Virus record (IMG/VR): IMGVR_UViG_3300020473_000010
Location: 186,001-250,000 of that record
Length of the DNA: 64,000 nt
Direction: 5' to 3' (one strand)
Part shown: one piece after another, positions 16,638 through 60,689 of the stretch
How positions within the stretch are numbered: position 1 is the stretch's first letter
Layout: every line of letters starts with the position of its first letter
Position numbers and translations under genes: made by a program
The notes under the pieces: model-generated
What the model was told of the DNA's origin: nothing
The model's database searches: none
The model's input: only the letters and a program-made list of their open reading frames with translations

Positions 16638-19484
16638 TTACCATGAAACCGATTGGTTGTCATCTTCTTCGCTCTCTTCATCGTCATCATCATTCTCATT
16701 ATTTGTGCTAGAATTATTATCGTCATTATCGTCATTGTCTTCGTCGTTATCACTGTATTGATCCGTTGAAGCCCCAACTAGATTTGCTGTTTCTGCTAAT
16801 TTACTAGTAAGTTGTTGATACCATTGTGAATTATTTAAAGCATCTACCATATCCTGATATTCTTCAGCTTCTTTTTGAGCTATTTCTTCATCGGACATCC
16901 AGCCCTCCGGAGTAGTATTTGGCATTGAATCTACATCATAAACCAACTCAGTAGGAATACCTACATGGAATTCTTTTGCTGCTATTACATAGTTTGTTGG
17001 CATATACCAATTGTCGACACTGGGATTACCTTCTGATTCTTTCCAACCAAAGATTTTTATTACATATTCTATTCTTGTGTCTGGCCAATATTCCGGGAGA
17101 CCATAAGAATTTGTGACATCTTCTTGGGATTCAAGCAAGTGTAAATAATGGTGCCAACGAAAGATGGTTGGTGAAAGCCAGTCTGCAATATATATGTCCT
17201 TTTCTGTAATTGCAAATTTTCCTATTAAAATTTCATTAGCTGGGATTTGCTGACCAAGTGAATGATGAAAACCACCGGAAGAAGAATTGTTAGGAGGGCA
17301 TCTCACAGTTACAATCCCATATGATCCTGTTTGTTTTAAATAATCTGAAAGATGGATATTCATTGTTACATACTTCATTAGAAACAATTTGTCGATTGTA
17401 ACTAACTCATATTCTCTTCTTTTAAATCCATCATCGTGTATTGCAACTCGAGGATTTACTGCGTCTCTCCCTGAACTTTTTCTTTGTTTTGGTTTCCATT
17501 TAATATCTAATCTACCATCAGTAATCCCGGAAACCATATAGAAATCTTTTACATTTTCAGTGACAATAATTTCGTCATCGTATGTTAAAGCTGGCGTATC
17601 TTCAAATTCTCTTATTAGATCAAAAGTATCTGAGCTCATAGCATAACGGTTTATATTCTGGAGGGCTGATTGTTGGTCTATTAAATCGGGTGCTTCCTCT
17701 CCGGCCATTACAGCTGGGTGATGTTCATACCATGGATATCTAATTCTTTTTACTTTACGGGGTATTAAACCTAGATGATCTACATGGAGTGGTAGAAAAT
17801 TAGGGTTTTCAACCCATGCTCCGTCGACGCCATACCGGTAACCAAATTCGGCCGCAAGTGAAACTTTTGAAAGCCGAAAATTAATTCTGCTCATTCCTGA
17901 GCCTCTAGTTGATACTCTTCGGTATTTTGTTCCTGCTAAAGTGTTTGTTGAAGAATTCCATGTTCCTTTTGCGCCATCAGGACCAAATTGTTCATATCCA
18001 CCGGTCAATTCTAGAAGTTGATATCCTCCAGAGGTATCAAGATATCCATTCAATAAAATTCTTTGATTGCTAATTAAAATTTCATCATGAAATTCTTTTA
18101 CATGCAAAAAATATAGTAACGTTGAATTATTAGCCCAAGTTGATTTTGTATCTTCCCAAAAGGGATATCCTTCTTCGTTTATTGCTGTTAAATCTAGCTG
18201 ATGAGGGCTTTTGGACGCAATAAAAAAATCATCTAGATTATTAAAGTCAATAGTAATAAATTGATCATCATCATTAACTATATTCATTTTTTGCATTAAA
18301 GGAGGGCCATAAATTCTTCTATCTAAGTGAGTTGTTTGAGAAAATGACTGTCTTTCATGTTCTTTACCAAACTTTAATTGGGTATTAATAAAATTTAATT
18401 GGTACCAACTGTAATCTGTCTGTATTGTTTCTTGATAATACTTTTGCCCTGGTATTGTTGATATTTTTTTAATTACTTGAAGGCCATTGGGTTCACAAAT
18501 TTCAATTTTATCTGGGATTGTATCTGTATCAAAATAAATATAAAAATTATGATATCCAGGAATCTGTGTAGATTTTGAATCTTTATACAGTTGCATATTG
18601 CTGTTAAACTCTGTCTCTACTCTCCAGTTATACGAATAAGGACTATCTTTATAGATAAACTGTTTTTGATGATCAAAATATCCGATTTCTTTATTGTGTT
18701 TATGGTTCGATAGAATATAAACTTGACCGCCCATGGGTTCAGTCCGGGCTGGAGAATATCTGTCGTTGAGAGAAACTGTAAATCTATTTCCGATATCATC
18801 TATGTTATAATAATTTCTGCAATACAAATTTGGTATTACGTCTGGTGAGTCATCAACATAATTTATGTGATGAAATGGATTTTCTACACTTACTGATAAT
18901 AATATATTTTGATCATCTCCATCCTTTGAATTCATATATGGAATATCTTTAAAATAATCTTCATCAAAAATATATAATTCTAAAAAATCATCGGTTTCAG
19001 CTACTCCACCAATACCTGTAGTGCCATCAACAATATTAAATGGGCCTAGGCCTTGCTCATCAATCCAAGTTTCGTACCACGGAGAAGGAATCCAGTATGT
19101 TTCGAAATTATATTGAGCTCTATTAAAATAATACTTGTCTAATTCAGATAATTCATCATAATGCTGATAAGACTGAGGTAATTGGTCATCAACGAATTCG
19201 GATGGCTGTTGCAATCCAGGGGCACTATTCCACGGTACCCTTTCTAGCAACCCGATATTTGAAGCATCGAAAACCTCTAATAAACCCATGGATTGTTCCG
19301 CGGAAAAGCTTAGGGCCTGAATCTCTCCGTTGTTTCTTACGGAATTTAAAAAATCCCTAGCATTGGATCCATCAACCGCATGGGGTTCTTCTATTACAAT
19401 TGTAGTATCTTTTTTTCCCGTTATTGCCAGAGACTTATTGTTTGGCAATTTTAATATTACTGATTTTCCAGCTGGAGTTGGCAT
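16638..19484 (-). CDS. Hypothetical protein (948 aa) with an acidic low-complexity C-terminal tail
   Basis: Long ORF, TAATG-coupled to the upstream gene; ends DNDEDNDDNDDNNSSTNNENDDDDEESEEDDNQSVSW. Confidence 0.55.
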   Translation of the reverse strand: MPTPAGKSVILKLPNNKSLAITGKKDTTIVIEEPHAVDGSNARDFLNSVRNNGEIQALSFSAEQSMGLLEVFDASNIGLLERVPWNSAPGLQQPSEFVDDQLPQSYQHYDELSELDKYYFNRAQYNFETYWIPSPWYETWIDEQGLGPFNIVDGTTGIGGVAETDDFLELYIFDEDYFKDIPYMNSKDGDDQNILLSVSVENPFHHINYVDDSPDVIPNLYCRNYYNIDDIGNRFTVSLNDRYSPARTEPMGGQVYILSNHKHNKEIGYFDHQKQFIYKDSPYSYNWRVETEFNSNMQLYKDSKSTQIPGYHNFYIYFDTDTIPDKIEICEPNGLQVIKKISTIPGQKYYQETIQTDYSWYQLNFINTQLKFGKEHERQSFSQTTHLDRRIYGPPLMQKMNIVNDDDQFITIDFNNLDDFFIASKSPHQLDLTAINEEGYPFWEDTKSTWANNSTLLYFLHVKEFHDEILISNQRILLNGYLDTSGGYQLLELTGGYEQFGPDGAKGTWNSSTNTLAGTKYRRVSTRGSGMSRINFRLSKVSLAAEFGYRYGVDGAWVENPNFLPLHVDHLGLIPRKVKRIRYPWYEHHPAVMAGEEAPDLIDQQSALQNINRYAMSSDTFDLIREFEDTPALTYDDEIIVTENVKDFYMVSGITDGRLDIKWKPKQRKSSGRDAVNPRVAIHDDGFKRREYELVTIDKLFLMKYVTMNIHLSDYLKQTGSYGIVTVRCPPNNSSSGGFHHSLGQQIPANEILIGKFAITEKDIYIADWLSPTIFRWHHYLHLLESQEDVTNSYGLPEYWPDTRIEYVIKIFGWKESEGNPSVDNWYMPTNYVIAAKEFHVGIPTELVYDVDSMPNTTPEGWMSDEEIAQKEAEEYQDMVDALNNSQWYQQLTSKLAETANLVGASTDQYSDNDEDNDDNDDNNSSTNNENDDDDEESEEDDNQSVSW

Positions 19485-20999: not shown

Positions 21000-21032
21000 A
21001 AAAAAAGTCGTCCGTGTAAAAACACGGACGAC
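21000..21032 (-). terminator. Rho-independent terminator downstream of the paired fibre-like genes
   Basis: Perfect 11-bp stem GTCGTCCGTGT (21007-21017)/ACACGGACGAC (21022-21032) with a 4-nt loop, followed on the minus strand by T7 (21006-21000). Confidence 0.85.
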
Positions 21033-21059: not shown

Positions 21060-23513
21060 TTACGATTTTCTATAGATTATAGAAACATTATCATCCAAAT
21101 CGATATCAAAGTTGAAAACAACATGCTCAGCACTAGAAGCACCTTGACCATAGTCATAATCTAAATCTTGACCATCATGACCACCAGTAGATGAAGCAAA
21201 AGATACATCTGCAAGAGAGGAATTTCCAGCAGACCCATTTGCAGTTCTTAACGAGAGAGGACGATCATGTCCAGTATTTGAACTTCTAGCAGCACCCCAG
21301 TCATTGAACATGCTATCAAAAGCACCTCCACCACCGGTTGCCCAACATCCTTTTGCTTGAATTGTCATTCTTACTGCAGCACCGCCTTCGTTTGCTACTG
21401 AAGCTTTATAATCTGCATCCGGATCTCCCAAAAATGGGTCGATTTCTGCTGCAAGATTTTCTAAAGCAGCAAACTGTGTTGCTCCAATATCAACTGGATA
21501 TCCATTAATAATGTCATCACATTTAATATTTAATCTGTCACCGTTTGTGTTTGATGCATCAACACCGTATTGGCCGGATTTGACAAGAAACCTTCCAGCA
21601 CGAGACGTACGAGTTGCTGTCTGGTCAGTTCTGACCCATGTGGTATCAGCACCAGATGAATCAACACCAGCAAGACAGTCGCCATCAGCAATCTTTTGGG
21701 CGCCATCAGCGCGGAGTGCACACCATTCAATTCGCGTATCATTTGCGTCTGGCTGATTAGCTCCAAATTCTAATGTTTGTGCAACAGCAGCAGTTTGGTT
21801 AAAGTTACATAAGTGAAGATATCCATCATTACTTCCTTGGATCACGCTTCGAAAAGCTCTGTAAAGCCGTAACTCTACTAAGCCTACATCACTACCTCCG
21901 GTACCAAAGTTGCTTGCTGAACCTCCAACAAATTCTATAATATCGTTATCTTTGATTTTGTCAAAAATATTTTTATGATCGCCGTTGGCATATTCAATAA
22001 CACCGCAGAGGGACTCGACATCAAACAAAAGGTTACCGCCACCGGCGTTGTTTCCAATCGCTGAATTTGGAACAGTAATAGTTTCATTAACTACAAATCC
22101 TTTACCAGGCTGAATAACTGTTACAGTTGCAGACATTCCGTTGGCGGCTGTAACGATTTGATATTTGGCGCCGACACCAGAAGATTGAGTTGTTACACCG
22201 TTTTGACCAGCTTCGACGTTGTAAGTTTGAGACGCCGGCCAGGCATTACCGCCATTTGCTTGAATACTATCAACTGATTTACAGCCAGAGTTAGAAAACT
22301 TGGAACCAGCAACATTAAGAGCTGATCTTTTATTTGTTGCATCAGCTTTTGCAATTGAATTTGGTCGATCTACATATACAAAAGTTGCACTGTCAGTTGT
22401 TTTATCAACACCCTTAGCCGATATCTTAATGTGAGATCCAGGAGTGATCAAATAACCGCTAGCGGAGCCCCCGGTAAGTAATACTTGATGATCTGCTGTA
22501 GCAGCAGCAGCAGTTCTGAAAGGGAAATCTAAAGTGCCTTTTGCTGGAAGGCCAGTTGATGAAGGTCTTAATAAAATACCATTGTGGTATATATCCATAT
22601 ATTGACTGTTTGTTCCAGTGGTTTTGAAAGTGTCAGTACCAAGATTGCTTAATGCTGATAAATTCCATTCATCCTGCATATTTCCTTGAATTCTTACTTC
22701 TCGTCCAGCTGTAATTTTATCATTAGCAGCAATTTGAATAAAACGTTTTTGACGCGTTTCTTTAACATCTAACCACTGAAGCTGTAATTCGCGATTTGAA
22801 CCATCGATAGTATTATTTGCTTGGATTGCTAATACCATGCCGGCAGCAGCTGTAGTGGAATTAGCAGGCAATTTATATCGACAGTTTCTGTTTTCTGCGT
22901 CTGCTGTACCAAAGGAAAAAGCGGCATAGTTGTCTCCGTCAGCATCTTCAAACCTAAGATTAGTATCAGATTTTATCGCAATATCATTAGCACCTAATTT
23001 TTGTAATTTATCGACTTGTAAAATACCGTCTCCGCGCAGAACCAATTTATCAGCTGCAGCAGCAGCAGAAGCTAATTTTACTGTAAAAGTTGCAACAGCA
23101 TCTGCGACTTCGGTGATTTCATTTAAGGATTCTACTTTTATTTGTGCAAAGTTGCCGGCGGCTGCAGCTTCGGAATCTTCTGTTTTAAATTTAATTGTTC
23201 CAATATCGTCACCAGCCCCTATTGAAGTATCTAGATTCGAAAACTGTAGAGTAGCGCCTCCATCGACATTTATTTGAGTGTTTGCTTGGTCCATTTGTCC
23301 AGCATTCTGATTAAACCAGTCTGATTTACCGTTAATTCTAGAAAGAGCGCGACCATATTCTTGTAAAAGGTCATTTACGTCTTGGACGTCTATGGCTGCA
23401 ACTGATGTTGAATTTTGTAAAGCATTATCCACTTTTAGAGCTAATGGGTCTGTGGAATTATGTGCCCCAAGAGTTCCAGACAAGTGCTGTAGCCTAAATT
23501 GAGTTTTATACAT
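21060..23513 (-). CDS. Fibre/decoration-like virion protein (817 aa), paralog of 23620..25764
   Basis: Ala/Gly/Asp/Thr-rich. Shares KTQxRLQ, YGxAxSRIxGKxDWFxQxAGQ, NLDTS...GDDIG, KLASxAAAA and PGSHIK, and the C-terminal F.FD...DD...YR, with its neighbour. Confidence 0.65.
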   Translation of the reverse strand: MYKTQFRLQHLSGTLGAHNSTDPLALKVDNALQNSTSVAAIDVQDVNDLLQEYGRALSRINGKSDWFNQNAGQMDQANTQINVDGGATLQFSNLDTSIGAGDDIGTIKFKTEDSEAAAAGNFAQIKVESLNEITEVADAVATFTVKLASAAAAADKLVLRGDGILQVDKLQKLGANDIAIKSDTNLRFEDADGDNYAAFSFGTADAENRNCRYKLPANSTTAAAGMVLAIQANNTIDGSNRELQLQWLDVKETRQKRFIQIAANDKITAGREVRIQGNMQDEWNLSALSNLGTDTFKTTGTNSQYMDIYHNGILLRPSSTGLPAKGTLDFPFRTAAAATADHQVLLTGGSASGYLITPGSHIKISAKGVDKTTDSATFVYVDRPNSIAKADATNKRSALNVAGSKFSNSGCKSVDSIQANGGNAWPASQTYNVEAGQNGVTTQSSGVGAKYQIVTAANGMSATVTVIQPGKGFVVNETITVPNSAIGNNAGGGNLLFDVESLCGVIEYANGDHKNIFDKIKDNDIIEFVGGSASNFGTGGSDVGLVELRLYRAFRSVIQGSNDGYLHLCNFNQTAAVAQTLEFGANQPDANDTRIEWCALRADGAQKIADGDCLAGVDSSGADTTWVRTDQTATRTSRAGRFLVKSGQYGVDASNTNGDRLNIKCDDIINGYPVDIGATQFAALENLAAEIDPFLGDPDADYKASVANEGGAAVRMTIQAKGCWATGGGGAFDSMFNDWGAARSSNTGHDRPLSLRTANGSAGNSSLADVSFASSTGGHDGQDLDYDYGQGASSAEHVVFNFDIDLDDNVSIIYRKS

Positions 23514-23567
23514 ATTTTTTCTCCAAAATATTTTATAAGATTAAGATTATAACTTTCTCAAACATCC

Positions 23568-23606
23568 TTAGGAAAGGCCCGTACTTTGTACGGGCACAAA
23601 ACCTAA
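23568..23606 (-). promoter_or_regulatory. Intergenic RNA hairpin (possible weak terminator or processing/stability element)
   Basis: GCCCGTAC-TTT-GTACGGGC (23577-23595), with possible outer pairing TTAGG (23568-72)/CCTAA (23602-06). Only CTTT follows on the minus strand. Confidence 0.55.
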
Positions 23607-23619
23607 AGACGACTACGGT

Positions 23620-25764
23620 TTATTGTCTATAAACCACGCATAAGGTATCATCGATTTCAAGGTCAAAAGCAAAAACAATGTAAGAATTGCCTGATCCTCC
23701 AACACCATAATCACCATTCAGTGCAACGCCGCCAGCAACTACTGGGCCGAATGTACCACCAGTAAGTGCTACATCTGAGTTTGCATTTGCATCTCTTAAT
23801 GATATAGGATTTGCGAAAGAAGTAATAGCGCCATTATCCGGAGCAACACCTTGAAGATTTCTTTGTGAAGTGAATGTAAGATCGCTAGCAGTAGCAACTT
23901 TATATCTTCCAGCAGTAATTGTACAATCAGCGCGATTTCCATCGATTGCAGTTGCTGCAGAATGGAAAGTTTTGTCTGCGGTACCTGCCCAAAGGCCTGT
24001 TTTACCAAGAGCAACTGCCAAGGCATCCCAAGCATTCTTTTGTGTAATAGTATTTGAAGCCAACGTGATGTCTTGAGCATTACAGACATCAACAGCAATT
24101 GCGCCGATGATATCGTTGTGTACAACAGATAATTTCTTTGCATCATGAGATGAAACGTCGGTAGCTCCGGAGATAAGTTTATATCTCTCTGCGCCATCAT
24201 TAGCAGAACGCTGATTCGCAAGGGTTTGTGGATTAGCACTGGTACCGTAAGCTCCAGCAATACAATCACCGACCGCAAGTACATCACCTGTATGAATAGC
24301 ATAGGAAGTTAACTTGAAAGTGTGTCCACCTGTTCCTGCAGAAAGAGTGATAACAGCTTCGTCTTGGTCATCAATTTCACAAAGCTGGATTCGATCTGTA
24401 GCCGGCTTCGAGCGAATTCTGTATAGAGTGCCATTGACCAGCCCACCAGGCATGCCACTTGCAACCTGTTCAGCTAACAGAGTATCACCAACTCTTACTG
24501 CTGCCCAAAAGGTATTTGGAACGATGACTCGATCTTGGGCTGCGTCGATACCTGACGCCGCGTCAAGGTTTCCTGTTGTTCCTTCAGCGTCTGTAAATCC
24601 GGCGCCTGTTCTTCCAGCAGCTCCTGCCAAGATAGAAGAGTATCTATCAACAAAACAGAAAGTTTTATTTTCGTCATAAAGGGTTACCTTGATGTGAGAA
24701 CCAGGCACGACTGGATATACATCGCCGTCTCTGTTTTGAGCTGTTCCACCAATAGCTACTGTAGCATCTTGATCGGGGCAACGGATATCTAAAGTTCCTC
24801 GAGCGTGACTGGTGTTTGAAGGCTGAAGATATTGACCGTTAACATAAATATCTAATCTTTGTTGTTCACTATTGCCGGAGACCATAGAACCTGCAGCAAT
24901 ATCTGGAGTTAAAGCAAGGTTATAACCGGTGGCTCCATCTAAATCAAATTCAACACCAGCTCTGACGTCGTTTGAGGCGCTAATTGTTAGGAATTTTTTC
25001 TGTACTGGATCGGCTGCTGTAATCCAGTCTAATTGGACTGTTGTTAAAGGGTCACCAGAGTCAGTTGAACTAATACCTAAAAGCTGGTTTGCTGATGCTG
25101 TTGAACTGTCGGCTGGTAATTTTAAGATAACACTTTTTGTTGTGTTAGCAGAGTAATCCCAAGCAGCATAGTGAGAATCATCACTGTCATACATCCGAAG
25201 TAAAGTGTCTCCTTTTACAGATATATCACCAGTACTAGTTAATTCTTGTAATTTATCAATTTTTAATGTACCATCGTGGGTTAAGCGCAACTTTTCTGCG
25301 GCTGCTGCACCACTGGCCAATTTAATGCTCATTTCTGCTTTTGCATCCCCAACGGAGCCGATGGCGTTAGAAACTTGCTCTACATATAATTGAGCGAAAT
25401 CGGCAGCAGCGCCGGCTTCTGAATCAGCAGTTGTCCATTTAATAAGACCTATATCATCACCAGTATTCACGGAAGTGTCTAAGTTTCTTAAAGTGATTTG
25501 TGGAGCTGAAGCATTTCTAATATCTAAATTATGAGTAAATTGTCCTGCAGCTTGGGAGAACCAGTCTCCTTTTCCTGAGATACGAGAAATTGCATTACCA
25601 TATTGTTGTAATATTCCTGCCAAGTCGCCTACGTCGATTGCTTCAGCGGCAGCGGCAGCGGGGAGGGCACCATCTGTATTAGCTTTAATTGCATAATCGC
25701 GAGAGTCGCCACTAGCAGCTAAAGATCCAGTCACGGCCTGTAATCTAATTTGTGTTTTAGCCAT
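23620..25764 (-). CDS. Fibre/decoration-like virion protein (714 aa), paralog of 21060..23513
   Basis: Same shared motifs as its paralog, and a similar TTTTGGAGAA ribosome-binding context. Confidence 0.65.
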   Translation of the reverse strand: MAKTQIRLQAVTGSLAASGDSRDYAIKANTDGALPAAAAAEAIDVGDLAGILQQYGNAISRISGKGDWFSQAAGQFTHNLDIRNASAPQITLRNLDTSVNTGDDIGLIKWTTADSEAGAAADFAQLYVEQVSNAIGSVGDAKAEMSIKLASGAAAAEKLRLTHDGTLKIDKLQELTSTGDISVKGDTLLRMYDSDDSHYAAWDYSANTTKSVILKLPADSSTASANQLLGISSTDSGDPLTTVQLDWITAADPVQKKFLTISASNDVRAGVEFDLDGATGYNLALTPDIAAGSMVSGNSEQQRLDIYVNGQYLQPSNTSHARGTLDIRCPDQDATVAIGGTAQNRDGDVYPVVPGSHIKVTLYDENKTFCFVDRYSSILAGAAGRTGAGFTDAEGTTGNLDAASGIDAAQDRVIVPNTFWAAVRVGDTLLAEQVASGMPGGLVNGTLYRIRSKPATDRIQLCEIDDQDEAVITLSAGTGGHTFKLTSYAIHTGDVLAVGDCIAGAYGTSANPQTLANQRSANDGAERYKLISGATDVSSHDAKKLSVVHNDIIGAIAVDVCNAQDITLASNTITQKNAWDALAVALGKTGLWAGTADKTFHSAATAIDGNRADCTITAGRYKVATASDLTFTSQRNLQGVAPDNGAITSFANPISLRDANANSDVALTGGTFGPVVAGGVALNGDYGVGGSGNSYIVFAFDLEIDDTLCVVYRQ

Positions 25765-25878
25765 TTTTTATTCTCCAAAAAATGTTTAGTTTATTCTTGT
25801 TTGAGACGAAAACTCTATACTGTCCAAACGATCTTAATAATTTTAATTAAACCAAAAACATAAATTGGGATTTCAACT

Positions 25879-25886
25879 TTAAATAT
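25879..25886 (-). promoter_or_regulatory. Putative late promoter ATATTTAA upstream of the 714/817-aa pair
   Basis: Variant of the ATATTTAT motif in the intergenic region, about 115 nt before the ATG at 25764. Confidence 0.35.
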
Positions 25887-25921
25887 GCAGCTCAAGCTGA
25901 AAAACTAAAAAAAATAAAACT

Positions 25922-26149
25922 TTAATTTCTATATAAAATCTTCTTTAAATTTCTAACATGATTATCGTAAACTGCACATTCACTACCAGTAAATTCTATA
26001 GCGAACTGAGCACCTTTTCCGTCAGGATCCGCAAACTCAAACATAAATTGGCCATTAGAAGAACGAAACGCATTTAACAACTTTAGGCCTTTCATCATTA
26101 GAAAAGCTGCTATCGATAAGTCCGATGTTTTATAAACGTTATTTTTCAT
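25922..26149 (-). CDS. Small DUF5659-like protein (75 aa), possibly DNA-binding
   Basis: YKTSDLSIAAFLMMKG.KL...FMFEF.D resembles the DUF5659 pattern (from memory). GAGG SD and ATATTTAT lie upstream. Confidence 0.55.
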   Translation of the reverse strand: MKNNVYKTSDLSIAAFLMMKGLKLLNAFRSSNGQFMFEFADPDGKGAQFAIEFTGSECAVYDNHVRNLKKILYRN

Positions 26150-26169
26150 ATCTTTTATTTACCTCAAGT

Positions 26170-26177
26170 ATAAATAT
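26170..26177 (-). promoter_or_regulatory. Putative late promoter motif ATATTTAT
   Basis: 20 nt upstream of the ATG at 26149. Confidence 0.5.
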
Positions 26178-26243
26178 GTAGTTAGTTAAGAACATCTCAT
26201 TCTATTTGTCGCAATGAGGTTTCAAATTTAATATGGTGACAAT

Positions 26244-27323
26244 TTAAAATACTATAATTAAAATACTGTCACCTTTAGTAATGCTCGTATTAAAATCTAT
26301 TTCATTATCCGATACAAGTTGATAATCATAAGAAGATCCGGATCTTAAATGCTGTCCGTTTAATAAAACATCTATTCTTGAAGGGTCGTAATTAACTGTT
26401 GAGAAATCCAGAGGAGAACAAGAAAAATTATCTCCTGGAGCATAGGATGTAGATGCTTCAAAATAGGTTTTTACTCTATTTGTTTTAAATAGCACCGTGT
26501 CAGATCCAGCGTCTGTAGTAATAGAAATTCCAGATCCAGCTGAAAAAGTTAGAGTGTCTGTTGCAGAATCCGCAACTACGCTTGTTTGCCCAGTGACAGA
26601 CAAAGTTTTAAAAGCTTGGTTAACAGATCCACCACCTCCACCACCCCCGCTTAAGGAAGACAGGCTTTCGTTGAGCATCTTCCCAACATATAAAAACCCT
26701 CTTGCATGTGCAGGAATTTTTGTAGAATCATAATCTTGTAAAAATAAAACGCCGTTATAATAATCAATTGACCAATCAATTTCGTCTAACAGTGGTATTT
26801 CCGATCCAACCCCACCTGATCCGTCATCTCTGTATATTTTTAAAATATATGGATTAGGAGATTGCCCAGAAAAATTTGGTGGAACAATTTGAGCTGCCCC
26901 AATAGTTTCATATAAAACTTTATCATTATCAAAAACGCCGTTTCCTTCATTCGGGTTTGATGATAGAGTTGTATAATTTGATGGCAGTGCTAATTTATAA
27001 CAATGAGGGCCGGCATCCTGTGGTTTCTGTACTTTAGAATCGGAATCCCAGTCATTAGAATTATAAGTTGATCCGCTTATTTGCAAAACTTGAAATTGAA
27101 CATATTCTACTGTATTTGGGGTTGACCCGCCGGCGTTCTGAAGAGCCCACAAAGTTCTACTTGGGTTATCCGGTACATCTTCCCCAAAAATAGTTTGTGC
27201 ACCAATTGTAATATTTGAACCAATTGATTCTTCTGAATCGGATTTTACTATTGATGTGTTTGCTTTTCCAAATAATTTCTTTTGGGCAAATAATGTTGCT
27301 GATAAATTACTTTTTCCTGCCAT
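26244..27323 (-). CDS. Virion structural/fibre-associated protein (359 aa)
   Basis: WSIDYYNGVLFLQD motif, a poly-Gly linker, an AFKTLSVTGQ..VVADS..DTL module shared with the 1871-aa ORF, and a C-terminal IDVLLNGQ.L...DY domain. Confidence 0.6.
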   Translation of the reverse strand: MAGKSNLSATLFAQKKLFGKANTSIVKSDSEESIGSNITIGAQTIFGEDVPDNPSRTLWALQNAGGSTPNTVEYVQFQVLQISGSTYNSNDWDSDSKVQKPQDAGPHCYKLALPSNYTTLSSNPNEGNGVFDNDKVLYETIGAAQIVPPNFSGQSPNPYILKIYRDDGSGGVGSEIPLLDEIDWSIDYYNGVLFLQDYDSTKIPAHARGFLYVGKMLNESLSSLSGGGGGGGSVNQAFKTLSVTGQTSVVADSATDTLTFSAGSGISITTDAGSDTVLFKTNRVKTYFEASTSYAPGDNFSCSPLDFSTVNYDPSRIDVLLNGQHLRSGSSYDYQLVSDNEIDFNTSITKGDSILIIVF

Positions 27324-27334
27324 AATAAACCGCC

Positions 27335-30300
27335 TTAGCTATAAGCCACTGTTATCCCTGAAATATAGCCTGTCCAGTTTTCGTGTGCTATGATACTAAT
27401 TATGAAGTACTCGGGAGATGAAGCGGTTCCATTAACAGTTTGTCCATTAAAAGTACAAATATTTGAAGCGCCGGAAGGATCGATAGCAGCATCTAAAGAC
27501 CCATATAAACCGCCGTCGCCGTCGGTGATATTTCCATCGCCCTCAGAATCTTTTGCTACATCCATCCAACCGGTTTTTCCAGGGATTTTTGCCAATAAAT
27601 GAATATTTTTATTTGCACCTATAGTACCAGCATAGGAGCCTGTTTGACCAACCAGTGTTGCATCTCCAGCAATTGTTATTGTTACACGCGGGGTATCTGT
27701 TGTAGTGTTATTTTTAAACCTTCTTATATAGTGTCTTGTTGATCGGCCACCTAGATTGGTATAATTCACATTGCTTAAAGGAGATGTCATATTGGTTGCT
27801 CCTGAATTTTCAGATGTATCTCTAAAATCTCCATTAAAAGGCCCTTTTTTAGGAGAGATTAATTTTCCATTATAAATTAACAAACCTGTTGAATATGGAG
27901 CGTAGGATGTTGAATTCATTGTTATTTGAGAGTTCCATCCGTTTCCGGAAATAACAGAAGCTTGATTACCGTAGCTACCCGATTGCAATCTCTGGGTTTC
28001 TTGTACAAAATTTTCTGTTGTATTAATATTAGAAGAATCACTTCCGGAATATACTAAGAAACTATTTTTCGTTTGAGAGGAAAGAGTTCCATTTGATTTT
28101 AGTGGATGTTTTATAGTGGCTGATACTGCAGCATTATGGGCTGTTCCTCCTGCGATGGTTGAATTTGGGAGAGAGCTGGGTTTATTAAATGTTAAAGAAG
28201 CAATTACATTTAAAGTTTGGTTCTGAGGATTTGCAACAGTAGTATCTAAAAGAGGTAATGACATAGATGATGCGTTATTAAAACTATTTACTACACCTGA
28301 TCCTTGAGCATCAACCCGAGTGATATTAAAGTTTGAATCATTTGTAATTGAAATAGCGTTGGTTTTTGAAGAGCAAACATTTTCATAGCAGTTATCAACT
28401 GCAAACGCTAAAGTTCCTGTAGGGTTTGCAGAGAAATATTTTACTCCACTTTGGTAATAAGTTTCTGCAGATGAAAATGTAGAGAAAGTTGGAGATGAGG
28501 TTGATATATCGTTTGTCTGTCCTAAAGTATCATTAATCCATTCTATATAATTTGTTTCTCTATCTGCTTGCCCAGAGATGGAATGGACAACCCGAGCATA
28601 ATTCCATCCATTACGCTGATCGTCGGGGTGGATCTTATAAGAAGCGGTTCTGTACCAATATCTAAAATCTGGCAGATTATCACCATCTTTTCCGTTTAAC
28701 GCTCTTGTGATATTATGAAATCCTGTTCGGTTATTTGAACAAAGACTTTCAGTTTTGGAAATACCTAAAATTACTAAATCATCTAAATCTGCTGTTGCAA
28801 GGAGAGATCCATTAACATATAATTTTAAAACGCCTTCATTGCCTTGTCGAAAGGCTAATGCTGGGAAATTATTTCCTGATCCACTTTCGTGAGAATTTAC
28901 CTCACCATCGATTGTTACATTTCCTTTAAATATTGCCATTCTAAGATTGTTGGCGGAAGTGGCTGTTCCAAAAGTTCCGTTGATATCAACTACCGGAGAG
29001 AAACCGGCTGTGGTATCATGTTTTTCATAACCGGTAATTGTTTTAGACGCCCCAAAGGAAAGTCTTCCTTCTTTACCGTTAGTATCGTTGCAGTCAATTC
29101 TTTCAACTTTTGGAGCATGTGAAACCGCGGTTACTCCAACAGCCGGGAATGTAACCGTCATATCCTCGAGAAACCCAGTCCAACCAGCAGGTGCTTCAAC
29201 TGCAATCACTACTGAGTCGTTATGCGCGACTGTGGTTGTTCCAAAACTGAAATGATTAGTAGCACTAAAGTTTGAAGAGAGTGAGCCTATATAGCCACCA
29301 GAGCCATAAGAAGACGAATTATAAATAAATGGCTTTGCTAAATCCATCCAGTCCGTTGAACCTGGAATTCTAGCAGCAATTTTAATATTAGTATTTCCCA
29401 TGGCTGAATCTAAATTAACAAGGGATGTTCCGTTTGCAGTAATTGCTAAATGAAAATCTCGAACCGGGTTTGAGGATTCGTTTTTAAATGCCCGGAAAAA
29501 AGTTTTAGTACCAGAATTTAAAGAGCTATAATTTGGATTTCCAGAATAGGCATTTGCTAAAGAACCGCCGTCCGTAGTGTTTCGAAAATCTCCAGAATTT
29601 AAAGTATTAATTGCTGAAAATAATTTATCGTTATAAAATATTAGGCCGTCTGCTTGGTTTGCAGATCCGGATAAGTGTAAATTGTTATTCCAACCATTTG
29701 ATGCTATATCTCCTTGGGCTCCGTATGAAGCGCTAACTAGTCTTTTATTTTCCATCCTAAAAGATTCATACTGATCTGTAGAATTATTTGTTACATTATA
29801 GATTAAAAATCCAGTTGCTGAGGTAGAGCCGCCATTTGACAAGTTTTTTGACTCAAATGGGTGTGTAACATTGACAGCTGCGCTACACGTTCCTCCAAAC
29901 TGGCCAGATAAATTAATATCCATAGCCCGGTTAATATTGATTATTTTTGTGTGGGTTTCGCCAGAAGATAGTGAAGGTTTGGGAGATATTGAAGATATAG
30001 AACAATTTGTAGTTGTGAATGTTATATCATCATTATTATAAATGTATTTATAAGCATTTTCAACATTGACTTTATAATTTGCAGTAGCATCAGTTGCATA
30101 TCTTATACCAGAAATTGCTACATTGCCGGTTAAAGTTATATCTGTTATTTGGTTTGATGTTGCTGCAATCGCCTCTGCGTTCGAATCATTAACCCATTCT
30201 ATATAATTTGTTTCAATATCGGGCTGACCCGATATTGAATGAACGACCCGAGCATAATTCCAGCCATTACGTTGATCAGATGTCCCGATTTGGTATTTTC

Positions 30301-30805
30301 CAGTTCTGTGTTGGAATGGTGCAAAAGCTGAGCCATCAGGCTGAGTTCCATCGGCTTTTTGAGATAAAATAAAACCTGAATTATTAGAATTAAAATGATC
30401 CTTTCCAGTTGATCCGGGAGCATTCTGGCCTGTTGAGGCTTGGGTGAGGTCGACAGAATGTTTTAGAGCTCCGTTAACGTAAAGTTTTAAAGTTCCTTGT
30501 TCAGCGCTTCCAAAAGAATTTGCAACATAATTTGTGACCCCTGTATTATGTTGGTTTTTAATAACATCTTCATTTAAATCACCAGAGATAACTTGGGTAC
30601 CGTTATATATACCTTTTCTAATATTGTTGCCCGAGGTTGTAGGGGCATAAGAGCTATTAACATTAGCCGCAGGGGAGAAGCCGGCTGTTGTTGAATGAGA
30701 TATATAGGGATTGCCACTAGATGATTGATCATTTCCGGCACCGAAAGATAATAGTCCCGTAATTCCAGGGCTTGTATCACAGTCGATGTTATCTAATGGC
30801 GGAGC
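27335..30805 (-). repeat. Intragenic tandem duplication of a ~560-aa unit (copy 1 ~29147-30805, copy 2 27335-~29116)
   Basis: APPLDNIDC vs APKVERIDC starts are 1689 nt apart. Shared TTAGFSP, LKLYVNG, QRNGWNYARVVHSISGQ, IPG.T.WMD and WTG. Near-identical DNA at ~28590-28620 and ~30247-30277. Confidence 0.85.
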
Positions 30806-40532: not shown

Positions 40533-43500
40533 TATAATACCTCGTTAGTAATAGTGCCTATAATATCAAGAGGCGGTAATTCTGCCGCTCTTCTATCGTA
40601 TATATCGACATGTACATCACCTTGTTTGTATTCATATTTGTGACGCTCTAAGAAATGGGATTCAATAACAAAATTTACTCCAAAGAATTGAACCGTGTTT
40701 GGCATCATTCTATCAATTAATGGTCCAAAGTTTAAAGAAAACCATTTAAAAAAATCATATAGAGATTTATAATTTATCTTATCAGTTAATCGATTAAAAT
40801 ATTTTTCTCTTAAATGTTCTAATTTAGGATAATTTACCGCATATTCGAGCTCCGGGGCGCCTAAATATTCGTTAAAGAGACCTAGATCGCTTATTATGTT
40901 TACCATATCTTCGTTAACTCGCTGTACAGAAGACATTTCAATTGAAAATCTTCGATCATCAACCGCCGAAAGTTCTGATGGATTATATAATGGTGCTTGA
41001 GCTAAATTGTTTTTATGGGCTTTAATTGGGTCTAAATAAGAATTAACTCTGATTTTATTAGTTGTAATAAATTGATCAAAATCCGGATTAATGATACTAA
41101 AATAAAACGGCTTTGAACTAATTACTTCCTGTCCATGAACACCGGGTGTAGCACCGCCGGCGGTGGCGCTCAATAAATTTTGGGAAATATCATCAATAGT
41201 TAGTTTTCCGGAACTAGGATTTGAACCTGTAATTTCTTGATAAAATTCATATTGCCCGCGAAGGCGTTCCCATCCACCCTGAGGGACGGACCCTTCGTAT
41301 CTTGTCGACAAGTTTGCTATATTAAACTCTTGAGGTGTTATAAAATTATAATTTGTTATTGGATCGTCTGCCCCTACAGAATATGGGTTTATGGCATGTT
41401 CTCGTCGTTCTACATCGGTTAGGCTCTTTGTCCAAAACCTTACTGCAGACAATTGTCCATCATATTGCTTTACTGAAGCTGATATTGCAGTTAGGCTATT
41501 AAGGTGAGACGTTGTATCAACATCATCTTTTCTTACCAGAAATCCATCATCATAATTTCCTGGTGTTTCTTGCCCAACTATAAAATATGGGCCATTTGGA
41601 GTATATAAAGAACTAAAAGCGCCTAAAACATTATCGGTTGAGGTGGCATAATAATAACTTGCAGAATGTGAAGCAAAAATACCATCAACTGTAGGCCTTG
41701 AGAGATGTAAATTAATTTTTGAATAATCTTTTCCTAATTCGTGGTCGACATTAACATACCATCTTGAGCCATCCCATATATTAACTCCCGGGATGGTTAA
41801 TTGGGCTGATACATCCGCTATAGGCACCAGTGAAGCCACATCGAAAGTTAAGGGATCACCGCCGGCGTTACCAATTTGAGAATCAGGTACTGACCAAGAT
41901 GAGTTAATTTGATAGCCTTTACCTCCATTTGTTACAGAGACCGTAGCAACACCACTAGAATCAATTGTAATACTGCAAACAGCATCTGTTCCATTTGCTG
42001 CAGTTACTCCGGAGATGCCATCAGTTACGGTGTATGTACCAGCTGGCCATTTGGTACCGGTATTGGTACTAATTGTATCTACGGTTGCAATAGCTCCGTT
42101 TATTGAGACCGAAGACGATAAAAATAATTGGACTTTTTGATCTAGATCAGCAAACTGTTTATCTTTTCTGCATGCTACTAAGTTAACATAGATTTCTTTC
42201 TTTCCAACACTGTTTTCCGATTCAATCCTCATTAATGATTGAGACAAAATGTTAGATTCCGGATCTAAATTATAATGACCTTCATAAGACCAGGAACCAG
42301 ATGTGAATTGTGTGAGAGTTGGCGCATCTGCTGGTTGTACTATAACAATATCTCCAGCTTCAAGCAATATTTTACTAGCACCAGGACCAGATGCGTTATC
42401 TGGGGCCCCGGGGCAATGGCGATAGGCTTTTAAATTCGAAGATTTAAAATAGTTAATATTTTTAAAATTTAAAAATTTATAATTTGAAGATTTTTTAACA
42501 CGGGAATCAGTAAGAGTTAATGTTTTGGATCCACCATATTCCCTCATACGGAAACCAGTTTCTATATCTAGACCAACAGCATTCATCAAACTTTTTATTG
42601 ATTTAATTGTGCCTTTTGACCTGAGTAGATAAGGAAACTGGATTAATAATTGGGCCCATAACTGGGTAATTGTTTGTTTCAGGGTTGAGGTGGTTCTTCC
42701 TTTTTCGAATTTTAAATTTTTCGTGTCGTGATATTGCGCCGGAGAAGCATCAGAAAACGGGTTTGGCAATTCAAATCCGTAAAACCTAGCAAGAAAAGGC
42801 ATAAATTGCAGTGGTATCGAATCTTCTGAATCATAATTTGCCAATCTTAAAGTTTTAAAAGTGTCTAGATAAATTTTTAATTCATCAAAATAATTTGCCC
42901 ATATAAGAAGAAACATTGTCAAAACTTGAGCTTGCGGTATTTTTCCGCCGGATGGAAAATTTGTTTTTGTATTGTAAACTTTTGCAATATCCCCATCTTC
43001 TGTTTCAAACCCTTCAAAAAACTGAGATTCTAAAAAATAGTGTTTTGGAACTAGTTTCGTAATTAAATTTGGATTATTAATATCATAACGACTAGCTGAA
43101 ATTAATAAATTTTCGTTTAGTGATATTACATCCGGGTGGGATGGAAACAAAATTGGGCTCATATTTTCGTTTTCGTTGACAACTGGTACCGAATAAGATC
43201 CACTTAATCGACATGGGGAATAATTTCCAGATGTTGAATTAATTTGCCCATGCAAACCGTTTCCGCTATAATCTAAAGTAATATTAGCATTTGAATAAGA
43301 TCCGGTTGCTTCATTAAATTTAAAATATAGATTTAATTCATCCTGGGCTGTTACTCCGTCATCAGCTATTTCTCTTAATTCAATAGGTGTATGGGATTTG
43401 CTCCAAATCTTGAAGTCATCCATGGAGCCAGTTAGTGTATCTGCTGGGGACCAGGTTTGGATTGAACCTCCGGAATCGACATAGCGAGCTGGCTTACTAA

Positions 43501-51186: not shown

Positions 51187-51472
51187 CTATTTGGTTCTCC
51201 TCGTTTTCTATTTTTGCAATTTCGTTTGCGACTCTGAGAATTGAATCTCTTGAATCCTTAATGTCATTTATAACTTGCCTAATTTGTGGAGAATCATAAA
51301 ATATTGGGATTTCTAAAATTTTTGATACACTAGAATAGCGATCATCTAGAATATCTAAACTTGTTTCTAATGAATCTGTAATTTTTAATATTATATTTGC
51401 AAATTTATAATTATAATATAACGAAACTATTAACGCTATAGAAATTATCGCTAATAACCAATTTATTATCAT
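51173..51472 (-). CDS. Small membrane-anchored hypothetical protein (99 aa)
   Basis: N-terminal hydrophobic helix followed by a coiled-coil-like region. Confidence 0.6.
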   Translation of the reverse strand: MIINWLLAIISIALIVSLYYNYKFANIILKITDSLETSLDILDDRYSSVSKILEIPIFYDSPQIRQVINDIKDSRDSILRVANEIAKIENEENQIDERP

Positions 51473-54720: not shown

Positions 54721-54766
54721 TTTTTGTATACCTCTCTAAATAAAGATACTCCTAAGTTTAAAGAAG

Positions 54767-55789: not shown

Positions 55790-55833
55790 ATTTTATTTGT
55801 AGTGAAAGGTTTGTTGAAGTTTTGCCAATTCTA

Positions 55834-55862
55834 ATTTTATCTAGTCTATACCATTTGTACAA
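55834..55862 (-). promoter_or_regulatory. Sigma70-like promoter upstream of gmd
   Basis: TTGTAC (55862-55857), a 17-nt spacer and TAAAAT (55839-55834), in a 75-nt intergenic gap. Confidence 0.45.
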
Positions 55863-55864
55863 GA

Positions 55865-58709: not shown

Positions 58710-58711
58710 TT

Positions 58712-60686: not shown

Positions 60687-60689
60687 AAT

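What the first reader, a model, noticed from the sequence alone, without database searches (positions are those of the whole stretch)
21060..26480. Russian-doll fibre proteins: a small terminal domain split by 365-465 aa of nested, swappable inserts
Seen: the 359-aa ORF ends in an intact ~75-aa domain (RVKTYF...APGDNF...RIDVLLNGQHLRSG..YDY......IDF....KGDSILIIV). The paralogous 714- and 817-aa proteins have the same domain cut after LDIYVNGQYLQPS / MDIYHNGILLRPS. It resumes only at the extreme C-terminus (DYGVG...IVFAFDLEIDDTLCVVYR / DYGQG...VVFNFDIDLDDNVSIIYR). Inside sits a second shared layer (RGTLD/KGTLD...PGSHIK...VDR || GDC.AG...DII...VD...TI.A...GG), and inside that each paralog carries different cargo. 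Inference: the chain runs out and back so that variable cargo is displayed at the tip of a conserved stalk. This would be a receptor-binding or decoration diversification strategy based on nested insertion rather than C-terminal swapping. The pair has its own promoter-like motif, strong SDs and a terminator, suggesting abundant products. This is the best candidate for an undescribed system in the window.
Basis: partly seen in the sequence, partly recalled or inferred. Interest (0 to 1): 0.8.

Follow-up and report, generated by a model that had tools for sequence, protein, structure and literature searches.

The report
Phage fibre knob split by inserts
Two neighbouring tail-fibre genes of an uncultured marine jumbo phage end in a small, widespread fibre-docking-type domain that has been split by 364 and 465 residues of extra protein inserted into one loop, a new example of a known way phages remodel their host-contact proteins.

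Summary
The 359-aa protein ends in an intact ~77-residue beta domain (AF2 pLDDT 88-96). A profile of that domain hits the 714- and 817-aa proteins in two collinear pieces. With residues 321-684 or 321-785 removed in silico, the pieces score as one domain (39 and 35 bits; shuffles at most 9). In 20 related phage loci found through the neighbouring DUF5659 gene, the same position holds one fibre gene. The domain is intact in 13 clear orthologues, with 3-17 residues at exactly this loop. It is split only here and in one sister lineage, whose insert shows no detectable similarity. The window pair is a lineage-specific tandem duplication. The paralogues share insert flanks but not the centre. The 817 centre carries a ~100-aa module also present in the phage's 1282-aa protein.

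The domain resembles the T4 gp10-like XD2/XD3 jellyroll by fold, a known fibre docking module. The proteins are fibres: a conserved N-terminal anchor plus a shaft module shared with S74-type fibres.

Not shown: that the halves pack (AF2 of the nested part failed, pLDDT 31), that the second layer is truly nested, or any function. The closest precedent is the evolved Dit protein. I rate it a new variant of a known kind.

The parts
26244..27323 (-). 359-aa connector-like protein. It has a conserved N-terminal domain (residues ~40-215), a Gly linker, and an intact terminal XD-like domain.
   Evidence: ORF. phrog_677 'baseplate wedge tail fiber protein connector', E 3.6e-5. More than 487 homologues. 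AF2 mean pLDDT 77.
26247..26483 (-). Intact ~77-residue beta domain (residues 281-359) of the 359-aa protein. This is the unsplit reference copy.
   Evidence: AF2 pLDDT 88-96 with seven strands. Foldseek: HRP29 tail 8es4_F E 5.7e-4; CBA120 TSP4-N250 7rfv probability 1.0 over 77 columns. Profile hit to K1 depolymerase 9k4a_A, E 0.0043, two tandem copies.
25922..26149 (-). 75-aa DUF5659 gene, a conserved syntenic neighbour lying between the connector and the fibre gene.
   Evidence: Pfam PF18903, E 3.4e-7. It holds the same position in L004, L007 and the IMG/VR loci.
25878..25889 (-). TGCATATTTAAA motif ~110 nt upstream of the 714 gene; candidate phage promoter element.
   Evidence: The same GCATATTTA core lies upstream of the orthologous gene in L002 and L007. 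Its function was not tested.
23620..25764 (-). 714-aa fibre paralogue (whole gene).
   Evidence: The identical protein is recorded on 9 contigs, the longest 288,796 bp. It was assembled independently in IMG/VR and in a metagenome contig.
25540..25764 (-). 714 residues 1-75: conserved N-terminal anchor domain.
   Evidence: The N-anchor HMM from orthologues hits only 714 and 817 in the window (E 1e-27 and 1e-26).
25003..25539 (-). 714 residues 76-254: shaft region.
   Evidence: Profile positions 75-178 match repeat modules of other phage fibre proteins (E 6.5e-6 to 7.7e-4). One of these, P0139, carries Peptidase_S74.
24805..25002 (-). 714 residues 255-320: first part of the split XD-like domain, ending ...LDIYVNGQYLQPSNTSH.
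24631..24804 (-). 714 residues 321-378: first shared insert flank (RGTLD...PGSHIK...FVDR).
   Evidence: Lies within the BLASTP HSP with 817. Smith-Waterman z = 11.3.
24280..24630 (-). 714 residues 379-495: insert centre. It has no detectable relative.
   Evidence: Unaligned. z = 1.1 against the 817 centre. No Pfam hit.
23713..24279 (-). 714 residues 496-684: second shared insert flank (GDCIAG...NDIIG...).
   Evidence: BLASTP E 2e-11. z = 8.6.
23623..23712 (-). 714 residues 685-714: second part of the split XD-like domain (DYGVGGSGNSYIVFAFDLEIDDTLCVVYRQ).
23577..23597 (-). Hairpin between the 714 and 817 genes with a weak U tract. It could be a leaky terminator or an RNA-stabilising element.
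   Evidence: -17.7 kcal/mol, z = -3.6. Sequence.
21060..23513 (-). 817-aa fibre paralogue (whole gene).
   Evidence: It is sister to 714 in the tree of N-terminal regions (support 90/91).
22554..22745 (-). 817 residues 257-320: first part of the split XD-like domain (...MDIYHNGILLRPSST).
22353..22553 (-). 817 residues 321-387: first shared insert flank.
21693..22352 (-). 817 residues 388-607: insert centre, different from that of 714.
21990..22298 (-). 817 residues 406-508: ~100-aa 'module X' inside the centre.
   Evidence: Smith-Waterman z = 18 against the 1282-aa ORF. Homologous repeats occur in other phage proteins, E 5.5e-7 to 7e-4. Only two copies are found in the window.
21159..21692 (-). 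817 residues 608-785: second shared insert flank.
21063..21158 (-). 817 residues 786-817: second part of the split XD-like domain.
21007..21032 (-). Intrinsic terminator after the 817 gene.
   Evidence: 11-bp stem followed by U7, -20.3 kcal/mol, z = -8.5. An equivalent terminator follows the single fibre gene in L007.
41810..42103 (-). Second copy of module X, residues 760-857 of the 1282-aa ORF (40532-44380).

Best explanation
The 714- and 817-aa proteins are tandem-duplicated copies of a fibre gene that is single-copy in a clade of uncultured marine large or jumbo myovirus-like phages. That gene always follows a gp9/gp10-like connector (here the 359-aa protein) and a small DUF5659 gene.

Shown:
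- Each family member has a conserved ~75-residue N-terminal anchor, a variable shaft that shares repeat modules with S74-type tail fibres, and a ~77-residue all-beta C-terminal domain.
- By fold, the intact form of that domain belongs with the T4 gp10-like XD2/XD3 jellyroll.
- In the window's lineage, the hairpin loop between the fourth and fifth strands of this domain holds an insert of 364 aa (714) or 465 aa (817). In orthologues the same loop is 3-17 residues long.
- The insert was present before the duplication, because the two paralogues are sisters and share both insert flanks.
- The centre was later replaced or remodelled. The 817 centre contains a ~100-aa module also present in the same phage's 1282-aa structural protein.

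Inferred:
- The XD-like halves still fold together, so the chain leaves the knob and returns to it, and the inserted domains hang from the distal knob of a trimeric fibre.
- They most likely add or change binding specificity, probably for a surface glycan, as CBM inserts do in evolved Dit proteins.
- The duplication gives the phage two fibres with different displayed modules.
For: - Split domain: independent HMM hits in two collinear pieces in four proteins (E 3.9e-7 to 2.8e-4, against E 0.098 for the best of 1000 shuffles). The halves rejoin as one domain after in-silico excision (34.6-43.8 bits, against at most 8.9 for shuffles).
- Insertion site: it lies in the loop at residues 327-333 between strands 324-326 and 334-338 of a confident model (pLDDT 88-96).
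- Positional orthologues: 20 DUF5659-anchored loci plus L004 and L007. They hold one fibre gene of 507-1069 aa. The domain is intact in 13 clear orthologues, and the loop ranges from 'GAS' to a 17-residue version in L010 and L012.
- Duplication: L002 and L007 have one gene between DUF5659 and the homologue of the 110-aa gene. 714 and 817 are sisters, support 90/91.
- Layers: flank z = 11.3 and 8.6; centre z = 1.1; module X z = 18 against the 1282-aa ORF.
- Fold class: Foldseek hits to CBA120 TSP4-N250 (probability 1.0), the HRP29 tail (E 5.7e-4) and podovirus fibre N-terminal domains. BFVD gives many tail fibre, tailspike and adaptor hits at 1.5-3 Å over ~80 residues. A profile hit to the N-terminal tandem domains of K1 depolymerase has E 0.0043. 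PMC8825819 and PMC12002296 describe XD2/XD3 as trimeric docking jellyrolls.
- Fibre nature: the shaft module is shared with a Peptidase_S74 protein. Baseplate wedge genes lie upstream.
- Functional precedent: evolved Dit inserts of 168 or 319 aa carrying one or two CBMs promote adsorption (PMC10688798).
Against: - There is no structural confirmation. AF2 of 714 residues 245-714 with the only four available sequences gave pLDDT 30.7, and the ESM Atlas models have pLDDT 0.44-0.45.
- No family, PDB or Atlas assignment exists for the flanks or centres of 714/817. Only the sister lineage gives sub-threshold End_beta_barrel and E1_FCCH hits (E 0.01-0.07). A binding function therefore rests on analogy alone.
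- Known XD2/XD3 modules are docking platforms near fibre N-termini, not distal receptor binders. Both ends of this fibre family are conserved while the middle varies, which is unusual for a receptor-binding tip.
- The first ~24 HMM positions of the domain are not aligned in the split proteins, only similar by eye.
- Expression is unverified.
Confidence: 0.7

Rival explanations
1. There is only one level of nesting. The insert is a linear string of three or more independent domains (first flank, centre, second flank) looped out of the XD-like domain. The shared flanks do not form a single domain split by the centre, so the architecture is not a true 'Russian doll'.
For: - The flanks differ greatly in size: 58-67 aa against 178-189 aa.
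- No protein with contiguous flanks was found in 1.84 billion representatives.
- Module X occurs elsewhere as an ordinary tandem repeat unit. This fits beads on a string.
Against: Variation is confined to the middle, between two conserved flanks. That pattern is what a second nested insertion would give, but it fits a string of domains equally well.
Confidence: 0.4
2. The terminal XD-like domain keeps the usual XD role: a trimeric platform for protein-protein docking. These proteins would then be branch adaptors or struts anchored at both ends. The insert would be a decoration or an added attachment surface, not the primary receptor binder.
For: - XD2/XD3 modules of T4 gp10, CBA120 TSP4 and podovirus fibres dock other trimers (PMC8825819, PMC12002296).
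- The fold matches them.
- Both the N-anchor and the C-terminal domain are conserved across orthologues, while the shaft varies from 507 to 1069 aa in total length.
- Upstream connectors carry one or two XD-like modules, like gp10.
Against: - No partner is identified.
- In known systems XD modules sit near N-termini, not at the extreme C-terminus.
- A 364-465 aa insert in the domain could disturb a docking face.
Confidence: 0.25
3. The long form is ancestral, and the intact short domains arose by precise deletions.
For: The tree cannot say whether the insertion arose once or twice. The insert-bearing clade also contains two intact members in an unresolved fork.
Against: - The intact domain is the form found in 13 clear orthologues, in hundreds of connector proteins and in unrelated phage fibres.
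- Repeated exact deletions that restore a short hairpin are less parsimonious than insertion.
Confidence: 0.05
4. The split-domain resemblance is chance similarity of short beta-strand motifs.
For: Each half alone scores weakly (i-E 0.007-0.5). Pairwise BLASTP gives E 0.023.
Against: - Four proteins show the same two collinear, complementary pieces.
- Rejoined scores are 35-44 bits, against at most 9 for shuffles.
- Positional orthologues carry the intact domain at the same place.
Confidence: 0.03

Closest known systems
T4 gp10-like XD2/XD3 jellyroll modules (T4 gp10; CBA120 TSP2/TSP4; G7C gp66; head-binding domain of podovirus fibres such as cyanophage A4 gp24)
   Same: A small all-beta domain of ~60-80 residues found in phage fibre, spike and baseplate-connector proteins. 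The intact domain of the 359-aa protein matches them by fold and marginally by profile. The 359-aa protein also matches a gp9-type connector PHROG.
   Different: - Here the module sits at the extreme C-terminus of a connector and of fibres, not near the N-terminus.
- In 714/817 it is interrupted by 364-465 aa. I found no description of an XD module carrying an inserted domain, although only a few full-text searches were run.
- The docking function was not tested.
Evolved Dit (evoDit) proteins of siphophages
   Same: The N- and C-terminal regions align with the full length of a 'classical' protein that lacks the insert. Internal inserts of variable size and content (168 or 319 aa, 16 groups, one or two modules) occur at a fixed place in a conserved adhesion-device domain, and they alter adsorption (PMC10688798). 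The logic is the same as in this finding.
   Different: - The host domain is Dit, a hexameric baseplate hub of siphophages, not an XD-like knob on a myovirus fibre.
- The inserts here are not recognisable CBMs.
- The window adds a tandem gene duplication and variation inside the insert.
Endosialidase beta-barrel domain (Pfam PF12195) and E1_FCCH-like barrels in phage proteins
   Same: A small barrel inserted within another domain of a phage host-recognition protein. The sister-lineage inserts (P0124, L007_688) give weak hits to both families (E 0.01-0.07).
   Different: The hits are below the curated cut-offs and are absent from 714/817 themselves. That the endosialidase barrel sits as an insertion in the propeller is my recollection, not tested here.
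Out-and-back chain topologies: the T4 gp37 fibre tip, flagellin variable domains and the nested domains of the T4 gp18 sheath (recalled from the literature, not tested)
   Same: The polypeptide leaves a conserved base, forms distal variable domains and returns, so the most exposed part is mid-sequence. Atlas structural look-alikes of the inserts included flagellin and sheath clusters, but all at TM below 0.5 and from poor models.
   Different: There is no sequence or reliable fold relationship. This is an analogy only.
Peptidase_S74 (endosialidase-chaperone) tail fibres
   Same: The shaft module at residues ~75-178 is shared (E 6.5e-6 to 7.7e-4). P0139 carries S74.
   Different: 714 and 817 have no S74 domain. 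They end instead in the split XD-like domain.

Membership tests
T4 gp10-like XD2/XD3 jellyroll module | Compact all-beta fold of ~60-80 residues that superposes on solved XD modules | tested here: met
   Tested on the intact copy (359-aa protein, residues 281-359). AF2 pLDDT is 88-96. Foldseek: 7rfv (TSP4-N250) probability 1.0 over 77 columns; 8es4_F E 5.7e-4; 9k09_A; 8vbx_S. BFVD hits align ~80 residues at rmsd 1.5-3 Å. E-values are modest because the targets are multidomain.
T4 gp10-like XD2/XD3 jellyroll module | Sequence-profile relationship to a protein with solved XD-type domains, or to a curated family | tested here: inconclusive
   Profile of 66 tails against PDB: K1 depolymerase 9k4a_A, E 0.0043, two tandem copies at 127-172 and 195-246. 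Pfam DUF4183 and Phage_T7_tail each matched 1 of 66 members, below the cut-offs.
T4 gp10-like XD2/XD3 jellyroll module | Both halves of the domain present, collinear and complementary in 714 and 817 | tested here: met
   34.6-39.3 bits after in-silico excision, against at most 8.9 bits for shuffles.
T4 gp10-like XD2/XD3 jellyroll module | Forms a trimer that docks another trimeric protein | not testable with these tools
   No multimer modelling and no experiment were possible.
Evolved-Dit-type insertion architecture | The termini align with the full length of a natural short form that lacks the insert | tested here: met
   Positional orthologues with an intact domain: L004, L010, L012-L016, L018, L023-L026. 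See also the excision test.
Evolved-Dit-type insertion architecture | The host protein is a Dit (distal tail protein) | tested here: not met
   No Dit family hit in Pfam or PHROGs. The host domain is XD-like, on a fibre. The comparison is therefore about how it works, not about membership.
Evolved-Dit-type insertion architecture | The insert encodes carbohydrate-binding modules | tested here: inconclusive
   714/817 inserts give no hit. The sister lineage gives sub-threshold End_beta_barrel and E1_FCCH hits.
Peptidase_S74 tail fibres | C-terminal intramolecular chaperone domain (PF13884) | tested here: not met
   No Pfam hit in 714 or 817. Only the shaft module is shared.
T4 gp9/gp10-type baseplate connector (for the 359-aa protein) | Match to a curated connector family, and position in a baseplate gene block | tested here: inconclusive
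   phrog_677, E 3.6e-5, over residues 225-312 only. gp6-like and gp25-like genes lie upstream. There is no Pfam T4_gp9_10_N hit.

The most novel reading that the evidence does not exclude
One loop of the XD-like jellyroll may be a general grafting site. In uncultured marine large phages, whole domain cassettes would be inserted there, exchanged and nested, including modules copied from other structural genes of the same phage. This would turn a docking module into a display scaffold and add a route of host-range evolution separate from C-terminal tip swapping.
Probability: 0.25. Interest if true: 0.6.

Novelty: new variant of a known kind. Interest (0 to 1): 0.45.

Why it matters
Host-range prediction and receptor-binding-protein annotation usually assume that the specificity-determining part is the C-terminal tip. 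Here the C-terminal ~30 residues are the conserved part, and the variable, probably exposed part lies mid-sequence inside a split domain. Tip-based classifiers and simple domain scans would therefore misread such fibres.

The finding also extends the 'insert a module into a loop of a conserved adhesion-device domain' strategy from siphophage Dit proteins to an XD-like module of marine jumbo myoviruses. It gives a clean natural series for structural and binding studies:
- no insert;
- a 17-residue loop;
- an unrelated ~300-aa insert;
- two paralogous inserts with swapped centres.

The proteins are orphans, with only two full-length relatives found across the 1.84 billion representatives and the metagenome contigs searched. 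The immediate reach is therefore limited.

Tried and rejected
- Word-index homologue searches with 714 and with a 5-sequence profile returned only the query. The 8000-candidate limit was reached; swamping by Ala-rich words is my guess.
- tblastn of 714 and of the 359-aa protein against 50,697 isolate phage records found no match.
- The scan of bacterial and archaeal genomes found no relative, so there is no sign of a prophage copy.
- Pfam and PHROGs on 714/817 and on their sub-segments found nothing.
- A PDB profile search for 714/817 and one for module X gave only chance-level hits.
- AF2 of 714 residues 245-714 with the four available sequences gave pLDDT 30.7 and is unusable, so it was not sent to fold search.
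- I tried to deepen that alignment with split fragments of intact domains. MAFFT smeared the first-half fragments across the whole alignment, so I abandoned it.
- I tested whether the window-type insert and the L007/P0124-type insert are homologous. They are not significantly similar: 9.0 bits against 8.8 for the best shuffle. Short collinear motifs (GDC.xG, HDD..G) leave a very distant relationship open.
- By eye the 714 and 817 centres seemed to share a barrel-like core. Shuffle tests reject this as unsupported (z = 1.1).
- The three ESM Atlas searches gave only leads below 0.9.
- The generic sigma-70 promoter scan is not enriched.
- The CATATTTAWA motif is not enriched window-wide: 2 found against 1.8 expected. 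Its support comes only from conservation at the same position in three phages.
- A 5' UTR hairpin upstream of 714 is not significant (z = -0.5).
- The RNA-run search listed no run holding the stretch.

Full report
**Context.** The window is part of a 288.7-kb viral contig, IMGVR_UViG_3300020473_000010. It was also assembled independently in a metagenome contig (CETM01091749.1). All large ORFs lie on the minus strand. Upstream of the finding, in the direction of transcription, are a gp25-like and a gp6-like baseplate wedge gene. Four giant ORFs follow. Further on are DNA-metabolism and sugar-modification genes. The nearest isolates by the gp6-like protein are only ~30% identical: Microcystis phage Mel-JY01 and Flavobacterium 'immuto' phages. 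This is therefore an uncultured marine jumbo myovirus-like phage, and the finding sits in its baseplate and fibre block.

**The observation.** The three ORFs exist as described. The 714- and 817-aa proteins are clear paralogues. They are 40% identical over residues 1-380 (E 5e-71) and 28% over the last ~225 residues (E 2e-11). The centres do not align: 714 residues 379-495 and 817 residues 388-607. Pairwise similarity between the tail of the 359-aa protein and 714 is weak (E 0.023), so I tested it with profiles.

The 359-aa protein has more than 487 homologues, and most end in the same ~77-residue domain. I built an HMM from 68 such tails and deliberately left out proteins with a 714-like N-terminus. 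This HMM hits 714 (E 3.9e-7), 817 (E 2.8e-4) and two relatives found later (E ~1e-6). Each hit comes in two collinear, complementary pieces: HMM positions ~24-47 just before the proposed cut, and ~49-76 at the extreme C-terminus. The best of 1000 shuffled sequences scored 8.7 bits.

I then removed the insert in silico, for scoring only. The halves scored as one continuous domain:
- 39.3 bits for 714 minus residues 321-684;
- 34.6 bits for 817 minus residues 321-785;
- 43.8 and 43.3 bits for the two relatives;
- at most 8.9 bits for shuffled halves.

**What the small domain is.** AF2 on a 95-sequence alignment models residues 281-359 of the 359-aa protein at pLDDT 88-96. The strands lie at 284-289, 299-301, 317-321, 324-326, 334-338, 341-344 and 353-358. 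The cut in 714 and 817 falls in the loop between the fourth and fifth strands (residues 327-333). Foldseek against the PDB returns ~78-residue matches:
- the HRP29 tail (E 5.7e-4);
- CBA120 TSP4-N250 (probability 1.0);
- N-terminal domains of podovirus fibres: PhiM1, Kp7 and cyanophage A4.

BFVD returns many tail fibre, tailspike and fibre-adaptor proteins at 1.5-3 Å over ~80 residues. A profile of 66 tails hits the N-terminal tandem domains of a Klebsiella phage K1 depolymerase (E 0.0043, two copies).

The literature identifies these as T4 gp10-like XD2/XD3 beta-jellyrolls, trimeric modules that dock other trimeric proteins (PMC8825819). The A4 fibre's head-binding domain has been likened to XD2 (PMC12002296). 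Pfam DUF4183 and Phage_T7_tail appear only below threshold. I therefore call the domain XD-like by fold. Family membership by sequence is unproven.

**What the 714/817 proteins are.** They have no Pfam or PHROG hit. An exhaustive HMMER search of 1.84 billion representatives found only 21 hits.
- One is a full-length relative, P0124 (682 aa).
- Some share the N-terminal ~75 residues and end in an intact XD-like domain (P0132, P0137).
- Some share the shaft module at positions ~75-178. One of these carries a Peptidase_S74 fibre chaperone domain.
- Some share a ~100-aa module present only in 817.

A metagenome scan added a 688-aa relative on a 45-kb contig (L007). The architecture is N-anchor, shaft, terminal knob, which is a tail-fibre-like layout.

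**Orthologues and the insertion point.** Gene order is conserved. A connector with one or two XD-like modules comes first, followed by DUF5659. After these come one fibre gene and a ~110-aa gene. I used DUF5659 as an anchor and fetched 20 IMG/VR loci. The downstream fibre gene is single-copy and 507-1069 aa long.

Its terminal domain is intact in 13 clear orthologues. The loop at the cut ranges from 'GAS' (L023) to 17 residues (L010, L012). The domain is split only in the window's two genes, in L007_688 and in P0124. The L007/P0124 insert (300-315 aa) shows no significant similarity to the window-type insert, with 9.0 bits against 8.8 for the best shuffle. Their inner segment gives weak End_beta_barrel and E1_FCCH hits.

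**Evolution.** In a tree of the N-terminal 260 residues, 714 and 817 are sisters (support 90/91). They sit in a clade with L007/P0124 and two intact forms, and that fork is unresolved. One or two insertion events are both possible, since 44% of bootstrap trees need only one change. The pair is therefore a tandem duplication specific to this lineage. The insert predates the duplication, because the flanks are shared (z = 11.3 and 8.6). The centres were later remodelled, and they show no significant similarity (z = 1.1). The 817 centre holds 'module X' (residues 406-508). This module is homologous to residues 760-857 of the same phage's 1282-aa protein (z = 18) and to repeat units in other phage proteins. 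That pattern points to module shuffling within or between genomes.

**What is not shown.** The only model of the nested region was useless (pLDDT 30.7 with four sequences). The Atlas models are also poor. Contact between the halves, the nature of the second layer and the position of the centre all remain inferences. None of the insert parts in 714 or 817 has a recognisable family. No RNA run was listed as holding the stretch.

**Expression signals.**
- A GCATATTTA motif lies upstream of the DUF5659 gene and of the fibre gene. It is conserved at the same positions in L002 and L007.
- Both fibre genes have TTTTGGAGAA-type ribosome-binding sites.
- A hairpin with a weak U tract separates 714 from 817 (-17.7 kcal/mol).
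- A strong terminator follows 817 (-20.3 kcal/mol, z = -8.5). It is conserved after the single gene in L007.
- The generic sigma-70 scan is not enriched.

**Comparison and verdict.** Inserting variable modules into a loop of a conserved adhesion-device domain is established for evolved Dit proteins. There, inserts of 168 or 319 aa with one or two CBMs fall into many groups and change adsorption (PMC10688798). The host domain here is different: an XD-like jellyroll at a fibre C-terminus. The phage group is different too. The window also adds a duplicated pair with swapped centres.

I rate this a real feature and a new variant of a known kind, of moderate interest. The main rivals concern two points:
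- whether the second level is truly nested or a string of domains;
- whether the knob is a docking platform rather than a receptor binder.

Noticed in passing
window 25922-26149 (-); L004 1044-1271; L007 5616-5846; L010-L028: A 75-aa DUF5659 gene always sits between the XD-bearing connector gene and the fibre gene in this phage clade (92% identical between the window and L007). Its role is unknown; fibre assembly factor or regulator are guesses. No paper in the library mentions DUF5659.
   Followed up: partly
window 25878-25889 (-) and 26169-26180 (-); L002 ~75-90; L007 ~5590-5602 and ~5879-5891: A GCATATTTA(A/T/G)A motif lies upstream of the DUF5659 gene and ~110 nt upstream of the fibre gene, conserved in three phages. 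It is a candidate phage promoter. It is not enriched window-wide.
   Followed up: partly
window 23577-23597 (-): A stable hairpin (-17.7 kcal/mol, z = -3.6) with only a weak U tract lies between the 714 and 817 genes. It could attenuate read-through and set different doses for the two paralogues.
   Followed up: partly
window 41810-42103 (-), inside the 1282-aa ORF 40532-44380: A second copy of the ~100-aa module X carried by the 817 insert. The module occurs as tandem repeats in several other uncultured-phage proteins (P0126, P0133, P0138) and has no Pfam or PDB relative by sequence.
   Followed up: partly
L011 1296-5879; L023-L027 upstream ORFs; L025 4400-5902: Connector proteins of related phages carry two XD-like modules: either two tandem type-A copies, or one internal type-A copy plus a C-terminal 'IFVNGxLQ...DYSVTGS' variant. 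This recalls the XD2+XD3 pair of T4 gp10 and hints at branched fibre complexes.
   Followed up: partly
L010 6325-8145 and L012 6357-8153: The orthologous fibres have a 17-residue expansion (GPYTTDVSAGSFTSG or similar) at exactly the loop that holds the large inserts in the window. This is an intermediate state of the same hotspot.
   Followed up: yes
window 27335-32950 (-): By eye, the 1871-aa ORF looks internally duplicated. Two long segments each contain '...LKLYVNG...' followed by '...QRNGWNYARVVHSISGQ...ETNYIEW(V/I)ND...'. Its homologue precedes the connector in L007.
   Followed up: no
window 16638-19484 (-): The 948-aa ORF ends in a long acidic Asp/Asn/Glu-rich tail.
   Followed up: no
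window 51469-63977 (-): A dense block of glycosyltransferases, nucleotide-sugar epimerases, an aminotransferase and methyltransferases. The phage may modify a glycan, on its virion, its DNA or the host surface.
   Followed up: no
protein P0123 (115 aa; database entry, not in the window): A database protein identical to residues 1-68 of 714 and then out of frame. It is probably a frameshifted read or assembly of the same gene in another sample.
   Followed up: no
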